Assembly: GCF_001194135.2 (NCBI RefSeq)
Contig: NC_068989.1
Location: 65,394,313 to 65,458,312, forward strand
Direction of reading: 5' to 3'
Source: Octopus bimaculoides
Lineage: Eukaryota
DNA: 64,000 nt
A model generated the notes under the pieces. The model saw only the letters and a program-made list of their open reading frames with translations. It was not told the DNA's origin and searched no databases. Below are positions 5,539-53,503 of the stretch, piece after piece. The position numbers were made by a program, and so were the translations under genes. Each line of letters opens with the position of its first letter. The first letter of the stretch is position 1.

Positions 5539-6869
5539 TTAAACATATATGATAATTGTTAGCGTCATAAGAATGTATAAACTTTCGAGAGAACGTGGAA
5601 TAGCTCATTTTTCGCAATGGTTCACGAAGTACATCAAAGCTATATATAATAACAGGTAAATACTGAATAGAAAACTGCTCTTCGACCTTCTCTGTTCAAC
5701 AGGCTTTTTCAACCCAATATTTACATGCAATTATTTATAGCTTTTTATATATTGCGACAACCAATTCCTACAAAGATTCATAAATTCGAAATGAATTAAA
5801 ATGAATATAACGATTACTAGGATGTGAGTGTGTTTGTAGGTTCCATAAATTCGTTGGTACGTGTAAGCATTAATGAGAGTAAAAGGTGTCGTGTGTATAT
5901 TTGGGAAAATAGATGTATGTACATACATATGTATGTGTATAAGTGTGAATAAGTGTATATGTATATATATATGCGTGCGTGTTCAAGTAAATTTGTTGGT
6001 TTAATAGCCTTTCTTAATGGCTTCAAAAACAACACAAATAAAGATCGTAAAAGTGATGCTATATGTCTAAAATTAAGTCTGCAGTGTGACAGAATTTAGT
6101 ATCCTGCTGTGTTGAAGATGTGAGAATATGTCATTAGTTTTCTTTGAAGTGGACCGTAAGAAGCACAACAGCTGGTTAATTAATAAAGTTTATTTATTTA
6201 TTTATTTATTTATTTTGCACTCTCATCCATAAATGTTTACCCTTCTTGGTGTGTTCTGCTACCAGCGCTGGCTTCACTACTAGTCAGGCTGAGATAAAGC
6301 AAGGTGTAACGGTATCGGTCACTCTCCTGACAGCTTCTTGGTCAAGCCTGTGAAAGTGGAGACCACCGGCGTTCTTGGCGCCCCCGGACCATATCCCTCC
6401 TCATCGCTATCAGGGTAGTGATGGCTGTTCGCAATTGTGACCCCGTGAGTCAGATTGGATGTTCCAGTGCATCTTCTACGCCATCCTCTAGGGGCAACGC
6501 CTTCTCCGTTTTGTCTGCTGGAATCATGAGGTGGTCTGACTTACAGGGAATTGTACGTTCCGCATCTTAACGTACCCCCCCCCCTAACACATACATCTAA
6601 CTACTTTATAATTTGGAGTCTCTTGGGCCAAAACAAATCCGATTTAGTTCTCCTCTTTTGATGTCAATGCAAACATCGAAATGATATCTATTTCTTTGTA
6701 TATATTATTCTCTGCCTACCAAATATCGCTCTCATACATCTCTTTCTCTTTTCACCCCCCTCTTTATACTTCTTTATCCTACACTTCCAACCGACGATGA
6801 TGTGTTTGCTGTTTAAGGTTCAAGGAGTATAATGTTCTTTTGTGCTATGCTTTGTTTCCCTTCTATTCT

Positions 6870-7310
6870 TTTATTCTTTTACTTGTTTCTTTTCACTGCG
6901 GCCATGCTGGAGCACCACCTTTAGTCGAACAAATCGACCCCAGGAATTATTCTTTTGTAAGCCTAGTACTTATTCTATCGGTCATTTTTTGCCGAACCGC
7001 TAGGTTACGGGGATGTAAACACCAGCATCGGTTGTCAAGCGATGGTGGGAGCACAAATACAAACAAATACAGACATACACACNNNNNNNNNNNNNNNNNN
7101 NNNNNNNNNNNNNNNNNNNNNNNNNNNNNNNNNNNNNNNNNNNNATATATATATACGACGGATTTCTTTCAGTTTCCGTCTACCAAATCCACTCACAAGG
7201 CATTGGTCGGCCGGAGGCTATAGGAGAAGACACTTGCCCAAGATGTTACGCAATGGGACTGAACCCAGAACCATGTGGTTAGGAAGCAAGTTTCTTACTA
7301 CACAGCCACC
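6870..7310 (-). mobile_element. SINE family 2
   Basis: Reverse complement of the 45221-45660 sequence. Confidence 0.85.
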
Positions 7311-8745: not shown

Positions 8746-9104
8746 GCATTGATAATTGTTAGTATAATATTGACCGTTTGACCATAGCTTGTAACTAAGT
8801 CGATGATTTAAACGACTAGGTCTGACCCGCGAAGACAGAAACAAAGATAGACGGAAAGATTACATATAATGTTTTAATGATTAGAAAAGCGTAGAAAATG
8901 CAATGACAAATATTTTGAAAAGACATATAACTTACAAATCGGTGATTATAGCGCGATGCATTTTCTAAGGAGATTAAGTTATTCTTGTAATTAGAATTAT
9001 TATTGTAGTTGCATTGTTGCGATCGGTGGGGCTGGTACTGTTTGGGATGTTGATACTGGGATTATCGTATCTACAATATTTACAATATTCTGTGGTTTAT
9101 TCTT

Positions 9105-9367
9105 TTATTCTTTTACTTCTTTCAGTGATTTGACTTTGGCCATGCTGGAGCACCGCCTTAAGGGGTTTTAGTCGAACAAATCGAATCTAGGACTTATTCT
9201 TTGCAAGCTTGATAGTTATTCTATCAGTCTCTTGTGCCGAAACGCTGGACGTAAATACACCAGCATCGGTTGTAAGCGGTGGTGGTGGATGAACAAACAC
9301 AAAGACACAGTCACATAAACACACGCACTCACATACAGACACATATAAACACCTCTTACAAACATAC

Positions 9368-13170: not shown

Positions 13171-13310
13171 TAAAAGATGTTTTTGAATTTGGACTTGTCT
13201 ACTTGTCTCTAAATATTTCTGATTCCGCATAGAAATAAATAAATAAATATATACATATATATAAACAATAATAAATATCTGAGCGAGCTATAAACAATAG
13301 CTGAACGACA

Positions 13311-13699
13311 TCATGAAGTATATTTGCCACTTAAATGTGGCTAACCCTTAAGGGCTGATGCTATTATAGCTTGTAGCCCCAAGAAGACATCTCCTCCTGT
13401 AGCCTATTGACACACTTTCTGTGCCCTATCAGTATTTGCAAAGGGAAGCCTTTGCCATCTCCAGCTTGAAGTGATACACTCGGACCCGAGTCATCAGTGT
13501 GTTACAATCACCGGTTGGCGATGGGAAGTGGTTCTCGTCAGTCTGGAGATGGGAAAGATGACTTCCTTTTGTAAATACTGATAGGGCACAGAAAGTGTGT
13601 CAATAGCCAGCGGGAGAAGATGTCTTCCTGGGGCTACAAGCTACAGTAGCATCACCCCTTAAGGCTTAGCCACGTTTATGCGGCGAACATACTTCACGA
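13311..13699. repeat. Fold-back (long inverted repeat) element, MITE-like, family A
   Basis: The arms are reverse complements, including a perfect 34-bp pair at 13404-13437 and 13573-13606 and the pair gtagccccaagaagacat / atgtcttcctggggctac. Confidence 0.85.
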
Positions 13700-13704
13700 T
13701 ATAT

Positions 13705-14410
13705 ATAACACTTCTCTCTTACGCCAAAGCTAACAAGAGGCTCTTTCAGCTGCCTCTCCCATTCTGCGTACAGCTGCACTTCGCTCCTTACCTCTCAGTC
13801 CAATTGCTGTAAGCATCATTCCATTCTGACTGAGCAGAAAATCCCCTACAGTCAACCTCAACTGGGAAAAGTCATACCTACCATCCCTTCTCCCTGCAAT
13901 TTTGCAGAAGGCTCTCATATCTGACACGCTTCTGTTCATGAGTCTCATTACACCACACTTCCCACGGGACTGTGAGTTCAATTACGATAATTTTCTTGAC
14001 CCTTTCAGACCACAGGACCACATCTGGACTCAGCGCTGTATGGACAATCTAGGGAAACTGCAATCTCTCACGTAAGTCCACTTTTATATCCCATGGCTGA
14101 GATCCTTGCAGTAAGCTATATATTGTTTTTGCTCACTTTACTGGTCTCTCTTCCTCTTTCACGAATTTATTTGATGCTGTTGTCTTCCCTTGATGATGAT
14201 GTTTCTTGCACCTGTTCTGCCCCAGGGTGTGAGCAAGTATTGCAAACAGCCTATCATGGCGCCAATTACATTTGTCTTGAGGGAGTGCTATTCTGCACTC
14301 TGCCAAGATGTATGCCAGAGTGCCTCTTTCTTCACAAAGTCTACACAACTGATCTTCCCTCAAACCCCATCTGTGCAGGTTTGTTGGCGTCAGAAGTGTC
14401 ATAAACCGCC
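13705..14410 (-). mobile_element. HERO-like non-LTR retrotransposon 3' fragment (CCHC knuckle plus restriction-like endonuclease), degenerate
   Basis: Minus-strand translation gives LTPTNLHRWGLREDQLCRLCEERGTLAYILAECRIALPQDKCNWRHDRL, then PD-VLWSERVKKIIVIELTVPWE...HEQKRVRY...FPVEVDCRGF and EAAERASC. This matches the C-terminus of RLE-type HERO elements, with stops and frameshifts. Confidence 0.85.
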
Positions 14411-14428
14411 CATGTATATATACATATA

Positions 14429-14460
<32 letters not shown>

Positions 14461-16366: not shown

Positions 16367-17177
16367 GCATACATATATATATCATCTTCATATATTAAAG
16401 TATTTAAATATATTTATATACATACATATGTATATATGTATATTCTTAGATACATACATATGTATATACATATATATTCTTATATTCATGTGTATGGATA
16501 TAAATACCTATATATATACACTCACTAATTCATATACGTATACATGTATATACACATGTGTGTTCGTGTGTCTGAGTGTGTGTGTATCTATGTATGTGTG
16601 TCTCTGTGTGTGAGTGAGAGAGAGAACACATATTGATTGTAGATTACAAATTACAAGGGAACCGTTTGCACAGAAAATATATATATAAGAAATGTCAATA
16701 GAAATTATTATAGTACACTGTTGAAAAATACAGATGTACATATATCGTCTATTCCTGTTTGGTTTCTCTAATTTTTTTTCTTTTAGAAAGAACTACAATC
16801 TAGGTAGCTATAGTTGAAAATTGCTCTCAAGTTTTTGCATTACTCTCTACCTTATCGTTGAAATGGTTTCGTTGCCGAATTTCAGCTAAAGCATTGATGT
16901 CTAAATTAAAAGATTTATGCCCTCTGATCCACATGTTACATTAAAATTAATCTCTATCTTCTCTTACATCTACAAACTATAAAGGAATGTAAGTGTTGAT
17001 GTAGGAACGTTAACAAGAGAAATGAAATATTTACTGAAATTCCCAAGATGCACTACAGGCATCTATATTTTATACGTGGGTTCGATTTGCCTTAGTTTCA
17101 CGTATATCCTTTTAGTTTTCCCTTTTTGCATCGCGTGTGTGCGTTCCCTACTACTCCTTGGCAGTCATTGTTGGTTT

Positions 17178-17335
17178 ATGTCCCCGCAACTTAGCAGTCC
17201 GGTAAAAAAGATACGATAGAATAAGTGATAGGTTTTAAAAATAAGTCCTGTGGTTGATTCTTTCAACTAATTCCTTGAAAGCGGTGTCCCAGCATGGTTT
17301 CATTCGAATGCTTGAAACCAGTAAAAGTAAAAGAT
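17178..17335 (+). mobile_element. SINE family 2, 3' half
   Basis: gtccccgcaacttagc...gatagaataag...aataagtcctg...cagcatgg matches the family. Confidence 0.6.
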
Positions 17336-28050: not shown

Positions 28051-28260
28051 TATAGAGGACGTGGGAAAATAATGTCTTTGTGTCTATATTTGTTTGCGTG
28101 TGCATCTTATGTAAACATGAAGTAAGTTGTATTCGTATATTTGTGAAACCCTCAAATGTTTGTCTATCTAATTATATCTCAACACGTGTGAATACACATA
28201 TCACCGTTTCAAAATATGTTTATATCTATAGATTTCTATCTATCTGTCCATTCACCTATC

Positions 28261-28312
<52 letters not shown>

Positions 28313-28460
28313 GTCTGTCTGTCTGTCTGTCTGTCTGTATGTCTCTCTCTCTCTCTCTCTACCTCCCTGTATATACGTGTGTGTGTATATATATATATAA
28401 ATATATATATATGTGTGTGTGTGTATGTAGCACGAACAGACCCTAGGGGTCAGCCACACT

Positions 28461-28765
28461 TAAGTGGCAATATACTACACTTTATCGTGCAGTTACTGTT
28501 AATACTTCATTTAGAGAATTAACATTGCTTGTTTTCACCTTTTCGATATCAGTGAAGAATTTCACTGGAAAAGTAGATATAAGATTGCCAAGATTTTGTC
28601 TCTCTCATCAAAGATCAGTGGCTATCGAACGCCGACGAAGGGAAATAACCCTGAAACCCGGGTCCGTTCGTGCTACAGATCATGATGGGAGGGATAACTT
28701 CCCTTGGCAAACAGGACACAGTAGTGTGTCGATAAGTGGCAATATACTACACTTTATCGTGCAGT
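28461..28765 (+). mobile_element. Retrozyme-like or Penelope pLTR-like ~272-nt repeat unit (one full unit plus the start of a second, cut by an N gap)
   Basis: The 33-mer taagtggcaatatactacactttatcgtgcagt occurs at 28461-28493 and 28733-28765 (period 272). The unit contains the hammerhead and several hairpins and has no coding signal. Confidence 0.65.
28618..28676 (+). ncRNA. Minimal type I hammerhead ribozyme with a CCGACGA core variant
   Basis: Stem I is cgaacg (28626-28631) with cgttcg (28665-28670), extended by gtggc/gctac. Core CCGACGA 28632-28638. Stem II is aggg-aaataa-ccct (28639-28652), then GAAA 28653-28656. Stem III is a C-G pair closing the palindromic loop CCGG. Cleavage triplet GUC at 28662-28664. 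Confidence 0.8.
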
Positions 28766-29469
28766 NNNNNNNNNNNNNNNNNNNNNNNNNNNNNNNNNNN
28801 NNNNNNNNNNNNNNNNNNNNNNNNNNNNNNNNNNNNNNNNNNNNNNNNNNNNNNNNNNNNNNNNNNNNNNNNNNNNNNNNNNNNNNNNNNNNNNNNNNNN
28901 NNNNNNNNNNNNNNNNNNNNNNNNNNNNNNNNNNNNNNNNNNNNNNNNNNNNNNNNNNNNNNNNNNNNNNNNNNNNNNNNNNNNNNNNNNNNNNNNNNNN
29001 NNNNNNNNNNNNNNNNNNNNNNNNNNNNNNNNNNNNNNNNNNNNNNNNNNNNNNNNNNNNNNNNNNNNNNNNNNNNNNNNNNNNNNNNNNNNNNNNNNNN
29101 NNNNNNNNNNNNNNNNNNNNNNNNNNNNNNNNNNNNNNNNNNNNNNNNNNNNNNNNNNNNNNNNNNNNNNNNNNNNNNNNNNNNNNNNNNNNNNNNNNNN
29201 NNNNNNNNNNNNNNNNNNNNNNNNNNNNNNNNNNNNNNNNNNNNNNNNNNNNNNNNNNNNNNNNNNNNNNNNNNNNNNNNNNNNNNNNNNNNNNNNNNNN
29301 NNNNNNNNNNNNNNNNNNNNNNNNNNNNNNNNNNNNNNNNNNNNNNNNNNNNNNNNNNNNNNNNNNNNNNNNNNNNNNNNNNNNNNNNNNNNNNNNNNNN
29401 NNNNNNNNNNNNNNNNNNNNNNNNATATATATATATATATACTCATCTGAAAGGATGCACTGAAGCATT

Positions 29470-29880
29470 GATATGCAGTGCTCAAGAGCAGTTCTGAAAA
29501 CTAATTACACCAAGTTCTAAATAGATAAGAGTAGCGAATCGCCACTTTGTAGGAGGTGTGGATGCAGAAATGAAGCAATCTCACATATTGTGAGTGAGTC
29601 TAGCAAGATGGCCCAAAAGCACTACAAAAGGATGCACGATAAGGTGGTTAAATTCGTCCACTAGAGACTATGAACAGAGCACGGAAATAGTACGAACATG
29701 AACCAAAAGGAGACACCGAGAACAAGGAACATAAGATACTGTGAGATTTTACAATCCATTGTGACTCCCCAATCAAGGCCCGGATACCAGATAATGTTAG
29801 ATATAGAAATGCCTGGAGATGCATGTATAAGGGACAAAGAACTAGAAAAGACTGAAAAGCACAGACTACTAAAAGACGAT
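29470..29880 (+). mobile_element. R4/Dong-like non-LTR retrotransposon C-terminal fragment, degenerate
   Basis: CRRCGCRNEAISHIVSESSKMAQKHYKRMHDKVVKFVH* ... KYEHEPKGDTENKEHKIL*DF ... LDIEMPGDACIRDKELEKTEKH, i.e. CCHC plus RLE region. CRRC lies at 29548-29559. Confidence 0.75.
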
Positions 29881-30850
29881 TCTTTAAAGCATGTCACTTG
29901 TTATAAAGATCAATATTTTTTCCATCTGTGATATACACACCATATCACATTCATTCTTCCTTCTCCGAAAATATAGAACAATAAAATCAAGCGAGAAGTT
30001 ATATATTTTCAATAGTCAATTAGTGTTGATCGCATTTAAGCTAGTGAAATAGCAACTATTCATATTGCAATTCTGAACACGATTGAAATATTTCTGAAAA
30101 CTTTTATGACGGATAAAATATCAGCCGCTTCAGCAGTCATTCCAGATTCTCTGCTAAAACCTCTATTGGCATTTTGTTTTGTCAACTCACAGTTACCATT
30201 TTCTTTCTAATTCTTTGTTCCTCCAATGAACTGCATTATAAGACCAGTTCCTTATTAATTACAACCGCTCGCTGTGTTTTCTATCAAGTAGCCGCATCTT
30301 GCATTGTCAAAGTTACATTACATGAGTGAAAATCTTCATGTTCTTGACTTGCCAATCCACACATGCAAGTGATTCTATTGTGTATTTTCTAATACATTTT
30401 ACACGTGTATATCGTCTACTTTAATAAACCTATAAGACGCTCTTTCTGCAAGAACATACAAGATGCATTCGATAAGTTTTGACCCTTTTGGGGGCGGAGG
30501 TAGTTATAACTACCCTAAATAATTGTAATATTAGAATATCATTATTATGCAACTAATAAGCTAACCTTTCAGATTTTGAAGAGGATGGCTGTAACAGCAC
30601 TTTGAACATAGCACTTTGTAACAGCACTTTGAACACAGCGTTGTCGCATTCTGTGATCCGCTGAATCTCCTTGCGGATGCTCAGCCACTCGTACGAGCAG
30701 GCGATTCCGTTGGCGGGATCAACTAGAACACTCGTCGTTATAACCGATGGAGTGCCAGTTGTTTTTGTAATATGTATGTACGTATGTATGTATGTATGTA
30801 TGTACGTACCTATGTATGTATACATCTATACTTACATACCCCCCCACCAC

Positions 30851-31574: not shown

Positions 31575-31700
31575 CACTGATTATAATTTGAAAATTTTAC
31601 TTTCTAGGTTATTATATGCTTGCTAGCCACTTATATTACTATTTATATTTATAATAATATCTTTGTATATATATATCCTAACATATAATAGACAAGTAAA

Positions 31701-32151
31701 TGTGGCATGGTATACAGGACAGTGCTACTAACGTTTATAGCCCCAGGAAGACATTCACTCCAGCTGGCTAACGACACGCATTCTGTGTCCGATTAGTATT
31801 TGCCTGTGATTAACACACGCTGCTGTTTATATCCCGCTCAGAGAATAAATATAGCTTATTTCTCCGTTTTCGAGATCAGCGACAGCGTGTCGCTGTGAAA
31901 AGCATATAGTATTTTGCGAGAGGAATGAGTTTTCATCACTAGCTTGTGATTAACACACGCTGAGGATGGGTAACCACTCAGAAACTCGAGTCCATGTGTA
32001 TTACGTAAGGCTAGAGATGGGAGCGATGACCTCACCACGCAAATACTAATCTGGCTAATGACACACAGAATGTGTGTCGTTAACCAGATGAGAGAGATGT
32101 CTTCCTGGGCGCTATAAACGTCAGCAGCTCTGTCCTGCATAGGACGCCACA
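31701..32151. repeat. Fold-back element, family A, second copy
   Basis: Inverted arms are homologous to 13311-13699 (tagccccaggaagacat, acacgcattctgtgtcc..tagtatttgc). An internal 18-bp direct repeat lies at 31805-31822 and 31945-31962. Confidence 0.8.
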
Positions 32152-32341
32152 CCTGGTTAGCAATTGTATATTACGATTCCGTACCGTAACTATGCATATA
32201 TATGCAAACTAGAAAGAAGAAAAAGAAGAAATTGACATAGACATCAGTTTATTCAAAGATATTCAAATCAATATATGAACACTGGTAAAAACCGGAGAAC
32301 TAGGATGCAAACACCCTTTAAAGGATTGTAGGTACTTGGCA

Positions 32342-45220: not shown

Positions 45221-45660
45221 AGACGCAGGAGTGGCTGTGTATTAAGTAGCTTGCTTACCAACCACATGGTTCCGGGTTCAGTGTCACTGCGTGGCACCTT
45301 GGGCAAGTGTCTTCTACTATATAGCCTCGGGCTGACCAAAGCCTTGTGAGTGGATTTGATAGACGGAAACTGAAAGAAGCCCGTATATATATATGCGTGT
45401 TTGTGTGTCTGTATTTGTTCCCCCTACATCGCTTGACAACCGATGCTGGTGTGTTTACGTCCCCGTCAACTAGCGGTTCGGCAAAACAGACCGATAGAAT
45501 AAGTACTAGGCTTACAAAGAATAAGTCCTGTNNNNNNNNNNCAGACCGATAGAATAAGTACTAGGCTTACAAAGAATAAGTCCTGTGGTCTATTTGCTCG
45601 ACTAAAGGCGGTGCTTCAGCATGGCCGCAGTCAAAAGACTGAAACAGGTAAAAGAGTAAA
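45221..45660 (+). mobile_element. Octopus-type tRNA-derived SINE, family 2 (internal microsatellite), full length
   Basis: Head gacgcaggagtggctgtg...ggttccgggttcag, internal TA/TG tract, tail gactgaaacaggtaaaagagtaaa. A short duplication across the 10-N gap is probably a scaffolding artefact. Confidence 0.85.
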
Positions 45661-46177
45661 TGAGTAAACAAAATATTTTTTGTCTTCAAATACAGTCGAG
45701 ATGTGAGAACTGGGAATGACAATACATAAGTATGAACCATTGCTTTCCTGAGTTCGATCTCACACACTTCAGTATTGATAAAAAAAGAGAGAAAAATACT
45801 CCGTTTCGCTATTTTATTTGGCTGAATGCTTGGCATAATATTTTGGCTCTCATTATCTTGACTTACAATTGGAATATTTCCCAGACAATTCTTTGAAAAA
45901 AATCTATCTGTGATTAAAGGAACAATAAAGTAAGAGAGATGGAAAGACAAGTCTTTAAATTGCTTCACGCTGTAGAAACTAAAATAATCGCATTATATAT
46001 ATTACCCCNNNNNNNNNNNNNNNNNNNNNNNNNNNNNNNNNNNNNNNNNNNNNNNNNNNNNNNNNNNNNNNNNNNNNNNNNNNNNNNNNNNNNNNNNNNN
46101 NNNNNNNNNNNNNNNNNNNNNNNNNNNNNNNNNNNNNNNNNNNNNNNNNNNNNNNNNNNNNNNNNNNNNNNNNNNNN

Positions 46178-53316: not shown

Positions 53317-53503
53317 TTTTAGTCATTTGACTGCAGTCATGTTGGAGCACCACCTTTAGTCGAACAAGTCGACCTCAGGATTTATTCCTTGTAAGCCTAG
53401 TTCTTATTCTACCGGCCACATTTGCTGAACCGCTAAGTTACGGGGGTGGAAACACACCAAGATCGGTTGTCAACCGATGGTGAGGGACAAACGCAGACAC
53501 AGA

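What the first reader, a model, noticed from the sequence alone, without database searches (positions are those of the whole stretch)
28461..28765. Hammerhead-bearing 272-nt repeat: candidate cephalopod retrozyme or self-cleaving circRNA locus
Seen: a complete minimal type I hammerhead (28618-28676) inside a non-coding unit whose first 33 nt recur 272 nt later, just before a 659-N gap (28766-29424). Established: non-LTR retrozymes in metazoans (bivalves, corals, salamanders) are tandem ~170-400-nt repeats with one type I hammerhead per unit, giving self-cleaved monomers and circRNAs, and Penelope pLTRs carry similar minimal hammerheads. Inference: this is a collapsed tandem retrozyme or pLTR array. 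I am not aware of one characterised in octopus, but cannot verify novelty.
Basis: partly seen in the sequence, partly recalled or inferred. Interest (0 to 1): 0.88.

Follow-up and report, generated by a model that had tools for sequence, protein, structure and literature searches.

The report
Decayed hammerhead-ribozyme retroelement copy
This is a real but ordinary, worn copy of a small non-coding mobile element that carries a self-cleaving hammerhead RNA motif, a kind already known from many animals, and this copy has a mutation in the ribozyme core that probably weakens it.

Summary
The 33-nt exact repeat (28461-28493 = 28733-28765, 272 nt apart) abuts the 659-N gap. 28618-28676 folds as a type I hammerhead with all three helices, GAAA and a GUC site. 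Its first catalytic box reads CCGACGA, not CUGANGA (U4 to C), so it is not "complete". No Rfam model matches it.

It is not a chance motif. The window holds two more diverged copies of the same repeat. Copy B (31675-32199, +) has a canonical CUGAGGA core. Copy C (13251-13702, -) has lost helix II and GAAA. Between A and B, 6 of 19 hammerhead pairs show compensatory double changes. Helix III is a palindrome (CCCGGG / CUCGAG), and the predicted active form is a dimer.

All copies sit in (TA)n microsatellites. B and C carry an inverted truncated partner copy and A a partial tandem, the insertion pattern described for Penelope-like elements. No reverse-transcriptase gene is adjacent.

Best reading: a non-autonomous, hammerhead-bearing retroelement (animal "non-LTR retrozyme", probably Penelope-mobilised). 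Only 1.12 units are visible, so a collapsed array is possible but unshown. Expression, circular RNA, cleavage and host species could not be tested. This is a new member of a known kind, of low to moderate interest.

The parts
28260..28426 (.). Microsatellite block, (TATC)n/(TGTC)n/(TC)n/(TG)n/(TA)n, forming the left flank of copy A. It is the probable (TA)n insertion target.
   Evidence: Sequence read. The boundary lies within 15 nt of (TA)>=4, against a background of 5.3% of positions.
28427..28460 (-). Segment X. On the minus strand it reads like an inverted, internally deleted hammerhead: GUGGCU, then palindrome CCCCUAGGG, then UC, UGUUCG and GCUAC. It is homologous to 13335-13367 of copy C.
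   Evidence: 17/18-nt inverted repeat with 28659-28676. Weak hit of my hammerhead model R1 at 28427-28457 (-), 10.1 bits, E 1.6. Alignment to copies B and C.
28461..28493 (+). First copy of the 33-nt exact direct repeat (start of the unit, 'S1').
   Evidence: the repeat finder family D3, 100% identity, spacing 272.
28494..28617 (+). Non-coding body of the unit ('S2'), homologous to 31823-31945 of copy B.
   Evidence: nhmmer and blastn. Alignment A2.
28618..28676 (+). Type I hammerhead motif with the U4C core variant. Closing stem 28618-22/28672-76. Helix I 28626-31/28665-70. Core CCGACGA 28632-38. Helix II 28639-52. GAAA 28653-56. Palindromic helix III 28657-62. Predicted cleavage between C28664 and C28665.
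   Evidence: Descriptor scan with shuffles. 59-nt ungapped alignment to copy B, 83% identity. 19 pairs, 97.4% paired, 6 double compensatory changes. Dimer cofold gives a double hammerhead.
28677..28732 (+). Spacer after the ribozyme. Its first ~30 nt pair with the ~30 nt upstream of the ribozyme, extending helix I into a long interrupted stem.
   Evidence: RNAalifold of A and B: distal 9-bp stem kept in both. Circular 272-nt monomer fold -88 kcal/mol, z = -7.
28733..28765 (+). Second copy of the 33-nt repeat, marking the head-to-tail junction. The contig ends here.
   Evidence: The contig-end duplication lies within one contig. Among non-microsatellite gap edges only this gap and the 10-N gap at 45532 show a duplicated edge sequence.
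28766..29424 (.). Assembly gap (659 N). Its content is unknown: the rest of unit 2, possibly more units, and probably (TA)n, since its right edge is (TA)n.
31675..32199 (+). Copy B of the same family. Inverted 5'-truncated partner at 31675-~31796. Hammerhead 5' fragment at 31805-31822. Unit body at 31823-31945. Canonical-core hammerhead at 31946-32004 (CUGAGGA, GAAA, CUCGAG, UC; cleavage after C31992). Spacer plus unit start run to ~32199. (TA)n on both sides.
   Evidence: nhmmer. Self-blast inverted repeat, 63% over 503 nt. Fold z = -13.6. Descriptor hit with exact core. Model R1.
13251..13702 (-). Copy C of the same family. It is a long imperfect palindrome with arms 13700-13505 and 13505-13310. 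A dead hammerhead at 13511-13471 has CUGAUGA joined directly to CUCGGGUC; helix II and GAAA are deleted. (TA)n on both sides.
   Evidence: nhmmer. Arms 78.6% complementary over 397 nt. Fold z = -26. Alignment A1. R1 hit 11.6 bits.

Best explanation
Copy A (28427-28765 plus an unknown part of the gap) is one worn insertion of a short, non-coding, non-autonomous retroelement family that carries a type I hammerhead ribozyme. It is an animal 'non-LTR retrozyme', most likely a derivative of Penelope-like element (PLE) terminal repeats and moved by PLE enzymes supplied in trans.

Proposed working of the family:
1. A more-than-unit-length transcript is made.
2. Two hammerheads pair through their palindromic helix III (CCCGGG in A, CUCGAG in B) to form a double hammerhead.
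3. Each cuts after GUC (C28664/C28665 in A), releasing unit-length RNA.
4. A host RNA ligase may circularise this RNA.
5. It is reverse-transcribed at a nicked (TA)n microsatellite. This leaves partial tandems and an adjacent inverted 5'-truncated copy.

Shown here:
- the motif and its conservation with compensatory changes between copies
- the predicted dependence on a dimer
- the tandem junction in A and the inverted partners in B and C
- the (TA)n flanks
- the absence of any coding capacity

Inferred, not shown: transcription, cleavage, circularisation, and the identity of the mobilising enzyme.

This copy has U4 changed to C in the core. That change also strengthens a competing inactive fold, so A is probably a weak or dead relic rather than an active locus.
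For: - Family: three homologous copies lie in 64 kb. A and B are 64% identical over the unit but 83% over the 59-nt hammerhead.
- Structure: of 19 hammerhead pairs, 97.4% of cells are paired and 6 show double compensatory changes. Controls with slid partners give 19-47% paired and 0 double changes. The closing stem also covaries in copy C (GUGAU/AUCAC).
- Not chance: descriptor hits are far above the shuffle expectation of 0.03 and 0.0.
- Dimer: the MFE of two copies is the double hammerhead with an 8-bp intermolecular helix III, -47.9 kcal/mol against 2 x -20.2. The monomer MFE is a non-hammerhead fold.
- Inverted arms of B and C: G:U versus A:C mismatches are 11:17 and 9:10. This fits neutral decay of a DNA-level inverted duplication, not a selected RNA rod. 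The inner breakpoints differ between B and C, so the inverted copies arose independently at each insertion.
- Target: all six element boundaries lie within 15 nt of (TA)>=4, against 5.3% background.
- Literature: partial tandem plus inverted 5'-truncated copy, microsatellite targets and broken short-read assemblies are described for PLEs (PMC8557442). Type I hammerheads with a short palindromic helix III that act as dimers, in 170-400-bp low-GC tandem units, define animal retrozymes (PMC7229834, PMC4209133). Retrozymes are proposed to be non-autonomous PLE derivatives (bioRxiv 10.64898/2026.07.22.740005).
- GC content of the unit is 40.8%.
Against: - No Rfam hammerhead model matches at any threshold tried.
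- The core box deviates from consensus (CCGACGA).
- Only two intact hammerheads were available for covariation, so the statistics rest on one pairwise comparison.
- Only 1.12 units are visible, and the junction lacks ~75 nt present in B and C.
- No PLE reverse transcriptase or GIY-YIG gene was found next to any copy. The rest of the window was only checked for open reading frames, not scanned against protein families.
- No target-site duplications could be defined in the microsatellite flanks.
- No RNA data could be consulted.
- The host organism is unverified.
Confidence: 0.75

Rival explanations
1. The locus is an active, multi-unit tandem retrozyme array of 272-nt units collapsed into the 659-N gap, producing self-cleaved monomers and circular RNA today.
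For: - The 33-nt repeat is exact and the contig stops inside it, as expected when an assembler meets a repeat cycle.
- Gap plus repeat would hold about 2.5 further units.
- The predicted 272-nt circular monomer is strongly structured, z = -7.
- U4C is tolerated in vivo in a viroid (PMC3088659).
Against: - U4C is reported to lower activity considerably in vitro (PMC3088659), and here it stabilises an inactive fold.
- The other two family copies are single units, not arrays.
- Most gaps in the window are (TA)n, and the right edge of this gap is (TA)n. The gap may therefore be mostly microsatellite.
- The junction is a deletion form relative to B and C.
- No expression data are available.
Confidence: 0.15
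2. The unit is the terminal repeat (pLTR) of a full-length autonomous Penelope-like element whose coding part is hidden in the gap or has been lost by deletion.
For: - PLE hammerheads lie in pLTRs.
- PLE insertions are partial tandems with inverted truncated copies in microsatellites (PMC4209133, PMC8557442).
- The same pattern is seen here.
Against: - The gap is estimated at 659 nt, too small for a reverse transcriptase-endonuclease gene of about 2.5 kb or more.
- The left flank is microsatellite and the right flank is (TA)n followed by an unrelated LINE-like fragment.
- B and C also lack any adjacent ORF.
- The hammerhead has the canonical retrozyme architecture, not the PLE min-HHR one (helix II 7-8 bp, helix I 4-5 bp; PMC4209133).
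Confidence: 0.07
3. The family is a foldback or MITE-type DNA transposon that targets TA dinucleotides. The hammerhead-like motif is incidental, or a passenger.
For: B and C are long imperfect palindromes of about 400-500 bp bounded by TA-rich sequence.
Against: - Arm lengths and inner breakpoints differ between B and C.
- Copy A has a head-to-tail arrangement instead of a palindrome.
- The right ends of B and C lie about 55 nt apart within the unit (inference), so no shared fixed right terminus is seen.
- The hammerhead is the best conserved segment and keeps its pairs through compensatory changes. This points to selection on an RNA.
Confidence: 0.04
4. There is nothing biological: a chance hammerhead-like motif plus an assembly artefact at a contig end.
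For: - No Rfam hit.
- One core mismatch.
- At least one gap in this window (45532-45541) is flanked by an artefactual duplicated overlap.
Against: - The motif is far above shuffle expectation.
- It is homologous to a canonical-core copy, with 6 compensatory pairs.
- The 33-nt repeat lies within one contig, not across the gap.
- Copy B independently shows unit-start sequence on both sides of its hammerhead.
Confidence: 0.02

Closest known systems
Metazoan non-LTR retrozymes (Cervera and de la Pena 2020, PMC7229834): coral, mussel and axolotl tandem repeats with one type I hammerhead per unit
   Same: - Non-coding unit of a few hundred nt (272 nt here; 170-400 nt described).
- Low GC (40.8%).
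- One type I hammerhead per unit, with 6-bp helix I, 4-bp helix II and a short palindromic helix III.
- A head-to-tail junction is present.
- The predicted monomer RNA is highly self-paired, with the cleavage site inside a long stem.
   Different: - Only 1.12 units are seen, and two of three copies are not tandem but carry an inverted partner.
- The core has U4C in this copy.
- 10.1-11.1 is A-U or U-A instead of the usual G-C.
- Expression as linear and circular RNA was not tested.
- No cephalopod case was found in the searched literature.
Penelope-like element pLTRs with minimal hammerheads (Cervera and de la Pena 2014, PMC4209133; Craig et al. 2021, PMC8557442)
   Same: - Palindromic helix III that implies action as a dimer.
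- Partial tandem plus adjacent inverted 5'-truncated copy.
- Insertion into (TA)n microsatellites.
- Short-read assemblies break at the element.
- A hammerhead remnant lies on the opposite strand about 200 nt away, comparable to the 'dual HHRs on opposite strands' described.
   Different: - No RT/GIY-YIG ORF is adjacent.
- Helix II is 4-5 bp rather than 7-8, and helix I is 6 bp plus a closing stem rather than 4-5.
- There is no unpaired base before stem II.
- The G10.1-C11.1 pair is absent.
Newt and axolotl satellite 2 hammerheads (dimer-dependent type I hammerheads in ~330-bp tandem repeats; described in PMC7229834)
   Same: The short helix III makes the single motif unstable. The active form is predicted to be a double hammerhead made from two units.
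   Different: Those are vertebrate satellites with more than 100,000 copies in long arrays and proven RNA products. Here there are three dispersed copies in 64 kb and no RNA evidence.
Schistosoma Sm-alpha SINE-like elements with type I hammerheads (own knowledge; cited in PMC4209133)
   Same: A dispersed, short, non-coding retroelement family that carries a type I hammerhead.
   Different: Sm-alpha has a Pol III-type SINE organisation. No tRNA or 5S-like head was found here.

Membership tests
Hammerhead ribozyme, type I | 5' catalytic box CUGANGA (C3 U4 G5 A6 N7 G8 A9) | tested here: not met
   Copy A reads CCGACGA at 28632-38 (U4 is C). Copies B (CUGAGGA) and C (CUGAUGA) meet it, so the family does and this copy deviates.
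Hammerhead ribozyme, type I | GAAA box, A15.1-U16.1 pair and a non-G nucleotide at the cleavage site (GUC) | tested here: met
   GAAA at 28653-56, U28663, C28664. The same is present in B.
Hammerhead ribozyme, type I | Three helices around the core, helix I open, supported by covariation | tested here: met
   19 pairs, 97.4% paired, 6 double compensatory changes between A and B; slid controls give 0. This rests on only two intact sequences.
Hammerhead ribozyme, type I | Match to the curated Rfam covariance models at gathering score | tested here: not met
   No hit in the window at gathering nor at E<=10 around A or B. The models also miss the canonical-core copy B.
Hammerhead ribozyme, type I | Site-specific self-cleavage | not testable with these tools
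   Needs in vitro transcription of monomer and dimer constructs, or RNA end mapping.
Metazoan non-LTR retrozyme | Head-to-tail tandem repeats (dimer or more) of a 170-400-bp unit | tested here: inconclusive
   One junction and 1.12 units are visible before the gap. B spans about one unit and C less than one.
Metazoan non-LTR retrozyme | One type I hammerhead per unit; non-coding; low GC; no LTR, PBS or PPT | tested here: met
   (GC 40.8%). No long terminal repeats were found.
Metazoan non-LTR retrozyme | Expressed as unit-length linear and circular RNA | not testable with these tools
Exact-protein look-ups found no other assemblies.
Penelope-like element (pLTR of an autonomous copy) | Adjacent ORF with telomerase-like RT and GIY-YIG endonuclease | tested here: not met
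   There is no ORF beside A, B or C. Pfam on six selected fragments, including the two LINE-like neighbour fragments, gave only a sub-threshold zf-RVT hit. The gap is too small for such a gene.
Penelope-like element (pLTR of an autonomous copy) | Insertion architecture: partial tandem, inverted 5'-truncated partner, microsatellite target | tested here: met
   Description taken from PMC8557442.
Penelope-like element (pLTR of an autonomous copy) | min-HHR architecture: helix II 7-8 bp, helix I 4-5 bp, unpaired base before stem II, G10.1-C11.1 | tested here: not met
   Helix II is 4-5 bp. Helix I is 6-7 bp plus a closing stem. 10.1-11.1 is A-U or U-A. Criteria taken from PMC4209133.

The most novel reading that the evidence does not exclude
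The family is a still-active retrozyme lineage of this (putatively cephalopod) genome, and two of its odd features are functional.

First, core position 4 covaries with position 16.3 (C-G in A, U-A in B, U.G in C). This could maintain an inactive monomer fold that acts as a switch, so that only multimeric transcripts cleave.

Second, each unit carries an inverted, gutted hammerhead (28427-28457, minus strand; also present in copy C). This could be a vestige of an ancestor with ribozymes in both polarities, linking animal retrozymes to viroid-like RNAs that replicate RNA to RNA.
Probability: 0.06. Interest if true: 0.6.

Novelty: new member of a known kind. Interest (0 to 1): 0.3.

Why it matters
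Hammerhead-bearing retroelements are a recognised source of small circular RNAs in animals, and they break genome assemblies.

It would also give annotators a model for a repeat that is probably filed as 'unknown' or SINE.

The family shows retrozyme-type ribozymes together with Penelope-type insertion scars (inverted partner, (TA)n target). That supports the recent proposal that animal retrozymes are non-autonomous Penelope derivatives.

It does not change the picture of how such elements work, and this particular copy is probably inactive.

Tried and rejected
- **Rfam.** Gathering score on the whole window and E<=10 around A and B gave no hammerhead hit. I do not treat this as decisive, because the canonical-core copy B is missed too.
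- **Reads.** No DNA reads could be used to span the gap or count variants, and no RNA reads to map ends or circular junctions.
- **Other assemblies.** The look-up of encoding contigs with four ORFs in or near the element found nothing on record. No other assembly of the locus was obtained and the organism was not identified.
- **Metagenome scans (two).** A family-specific hammerhead pattern gave 0 hits. A looser pattern gave one hit in a GC-rich contig (L001) with G at core position 4, judged a chance match.
- **Pfam on raw DNA references.** Selected fragments with X at stops gave only a sub-threshold zf-RVT hit at 14136-14459. I did not scan the full six-frame translation of the window.
- **SINE head.** No tRNA and no Rfam small-RNA match.
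- **Selected RNA rod for the B and C hairpins.** Rejected because G:U does not exceed A:C among mismatches.
- **Further copies.** Profile nhmmer and my covariance model R1 over the window found none beyond A, B and C.
- **Alignment of copy C.** MAFFT misplaced the deletion in its hammerhead. I therefore did the pair counts on A and B only and read C by eye.

Full report
**Observation**

A 33-nt stretch (28461-28493) recurs exactly at 28733-28765, 272 nt downstream. The second copy runs straight into a 659-N gap at 28766-29424.

Between the two copies, 28618-28676 can be drawn as a type I hammerhead:
- closing stem GUGGC/GCUAC
- internal loop
- helix I CGAACG/CGUUCG
- helix II AGGG/CCCU with loop AAAUAA
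- GAAA
- a palindromic helix III, CCCGGG
- GUC, with cleavage expected between C28664 and C28665

The 5' catalytic box reads CCGACGA rather than CUGANGA, so U4 is C. The motif is therefore not "complete".

By the criteria of Cervera and de la Pena (PMC4209133) its architecture is the canonical metazoan type I form. It is not the Penelope "min-HHR", which has a 7-8-bp helix II, a 4-5-bp helix I and an unpaired base before stem II.

**Is it more than chance?**

Rfam gives nothing at gathering score for the window. It also gives nothing at E<=10 for 28400-28765. The same search misses a second copy with a perfect core, so the negative says little for hammerheads with a tiny helix III.

My own descriptor required:
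- helix I of at least 4-5 bp
- the core box
- helix II of at least 4 bp
- GAAA
- a self-complementary helix III
- U followed by a non-G nucleotide

It found exactly two sites in 64 kb on both strands. One is 28626-28670, with one core mismatch. The other is 31953-31999, with an exact core. In 100 dinucleotide-type shuffles the expected counts were 0.03 and 0.0.

**A repeat family**

blastn and nhmmer show that the unit belongs to a family with three copies in the window:
- A: 28427-28765 (+)
- B: 31675-32199 (+)
- C: 13251-13702 (-)

A and B are 64% identical over the unit. They are 83% identical, without gaps, over the 59-nt hammerhead.

B has CUGAGGA, a 5-bp helix II, GAAA, CUCGAG and UC. 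C has CUGAUGA joined directly to CUCGGGUC, so helix II and GAAA are deleted and it is dead.

On the A/B alignment, 19 hammerhead pairs give 97.4% paired cells. Six pairs have changes on both sides, one has a one-sided change and one is broken. Sliding the partners by 1-3 columns gives 19-47% paired and no double changes. The closing stem also covaries in C (GUGAU/AUCAC).

A more distal 9-bp stem flanking the ribozyme is kept in A and B.

A covariance model built from A and B finds no further intact hammerhead in the window. It finds only the C remnant (11.6 bits) and a weak inverted remnant at 28427-28457 (10.1 bits).

The family ancestor therefore had a consensus hammerhead, and U4C is a derived change in copy A or its subfamily. 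Perreault et al. (PMC3088659) state that U4C considerably decreases activity in vitro. They also note that a viroid carrying it remains infectious.

**Predicted behaviour of the RNA**

The 59-nt motif alone does not fold as a hammerhead. Its minimum-energy fold (-20.2 kcal/mol) pairs C3-C4-G5 with the 3' half of helix III. The hammerhead fold scores -13.6.

Two copies cofold into a double hammerhead with an 8-bp intermolecular helix III, at -47.9 against -40.4 kcal/mol for two monomers. Copy B behaves the same way.

This is the dimer-dependent behaviour described for newt and axolotl hammerheads and proposed for Penelope hammerheads (PMC7229834, PMC4209133).

The 272-nt unit, taken as a circle from the cleavage site, folds at -88 kcal/mol, with z = -7 against shuffles. 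The cleavage site sits inside a long interrupted stem.

In A, C4 makes the competing fold stronger. Position 4 pairs with 16.3 in all three copies (C-G, U-A, U.G). With so few sequences this is only an anecdote.

**Architecture of the insertions**

B and C are long imperfect palindromes. C has arms 78.6% complementary over 397 nt, and B 63% over 503 nt. Their folds give z = -26 and -13.6.

Among arm mismatches, G:U does not exceed A:C (9:10 in C, 11:17 in B). The palindromes therefore look like DNA-level inverted duplications decaying neutrally, not selected RNA rods. The inner breakpoints of the inverted part differ between B and C.

Each direct copy runs from somewhere upstream of the hammerhead, through a spacer, into the start of the unit. 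B also has a hammerhead 5' fragment (31805-31822) joined by microhomology to the unit body.

A shows unit start, body, hammerhead, spacer and unit start again. That is one head-to-tail junction. The junction lacks about 75 nt that B and C have between spacer and unit start, and 34 nt of that segment precede the first unit of A.

All six element boundaries lie within 15 nt of (TA)>=4, whereas 5.3% of window positions do.

Partial tandems, an adjacent inverted 5'-truncated copy, microsatellite targets and broken short-read assemblies are the described hallmarks of Penelope-like element insertions (PMC8557442). Dual hammerheads 100-700 bp apart on opposite strands were also noted (PMC4209133).

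No reverse transcriptase or GIY-YIG gene lies next to any copy. The flanks of A are microsatellite on the left. On the right, beyond the gap, come (TA)n and an unrelated LINE-like fragment.

**Interpretation**

The best-supported reading is a non-autonomous, hammerhead-bearing retroelement of the animal non-LTR retrozyme kind, probably mobilised by Penelope-like elements. A 2026 preprint proposes exactly this relationship for vertebrates (10.64898/2026.07.22.740005).

Penelope elements are reported as abundant in octopus genomes (PMC13282606, PMC8967140). This fits if the window is cephalopod, but I could not verify the organism.

Still inferred are transcription, self-cleavage, circularisation by a host ligase, and reverse transcription at nicked (TA)n.

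The contig stops inside an exact repeat, as at a repeat cycle, and the duplication lies within one contig rather than across the gap. But it is unproven:
- only 1.12 units are visible
- the sister copies are not arrays
- most gaps here are (TA)n
- the right edge of this gap is (TA)n

**Rivals**

- A solo pLTR of an autonomous element fails on the missing ORF, the gap size and the hammerhead architecture.
- A foldback or MITE DNA transposon fails on the variable arm breakpoints, the tandem form of A and the RNA-level conservation of the ribozyme.
- Chance plus artefact fails on homology and covariation.

**Novelty and score**

Type I hammerheads in short tandem or dispersed repeats are known from cnidarians to amphibians, including a mollusc (PMC7229834). 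Penelope hammerheads are described as massive and widespread in metazoans (PMC4209133).

In the searched library I found no paper tying hammerheads or retrozymes to cephalopods.

I rate this as a new member of a known kind. It is a correct catch of a real ribozyme-bearing repeat, but ordinary in kind. This copy is probably impaired, and activity is untested. Interest 0.3.

**What could not be done**

- Other assemblies of the locus.
- Relatives in metagenomes: 0 hits, then one chance hit.

Noticed in passing
28427-28457 (minus strand); also 13335-13367 and its inverted twin 13646-13673: The segment just upstream of the unit start reads, on the opposite strand, like a hammerhead with its middle deleted: closing stem, palindrome, UC and the helix I 3' strand. 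It scores 10.1 and 10.9 bits with my model. In A it forms a 17/18-nt inverted repeat with the 3' half of the real hammerhead.
   Followed up: partly
28632-28638 with 28660-28662; 31960-31966 with 31988-31990: Core position 4 can pair with position 16.3 in an alternative inactive fold, and the two positions change together (A: C-G, B: U-A, C: U.G). This might be a switch or a coincidence; only three sequences are available.
   Followed up: partly
6865-7082(+), 9098-9322(+), 17174-17334(-), 45406-45666(-), 53323-53499(+): A second, unrelated interspersed repeat family with five copies at 70-89% identity, possibly a SINE. It was not classified.
   Followed up: partly
45532-45541: This 10-N gap lies inside one copy of that second repeat. 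About 43-55 nt are present on both sides of the gap, which looks like an unmerged contig overlap (assembly artefact).
   Followed up: partly
29548-29890(+) and 14136-14459(-): Decayed fragments with a CxxC...H...C knuckle, as in the C-terminal part of LINE reverse transcriptases. One lies beside copy A and one beside copy C. Only the second gives a sub-threshold Pfam zf-RVT hit (19.8 bits). Their orientation relative to the hammerhead element differs, so the adjacency is probably coincidental.
   Followed up: partly
whole window: The window has 35% GC, 16 N gaps (5,435 N) and very dense microsatellites. At least 12 of the 16 gaps abut (TA)n, so (TA)n tracts are the main cause of assembly breaks here.
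   Followed up: yes
31805-31822 and 31945-31962: In copy B an 18-nt hammerhead 5' fragment (closing stem, helix I strand and CUG) is duplicated 140 nt upstream. It is joined to the unit body at a GCTG microhomology, which looks like a template-switch or recombination junction.
   Followed up: no
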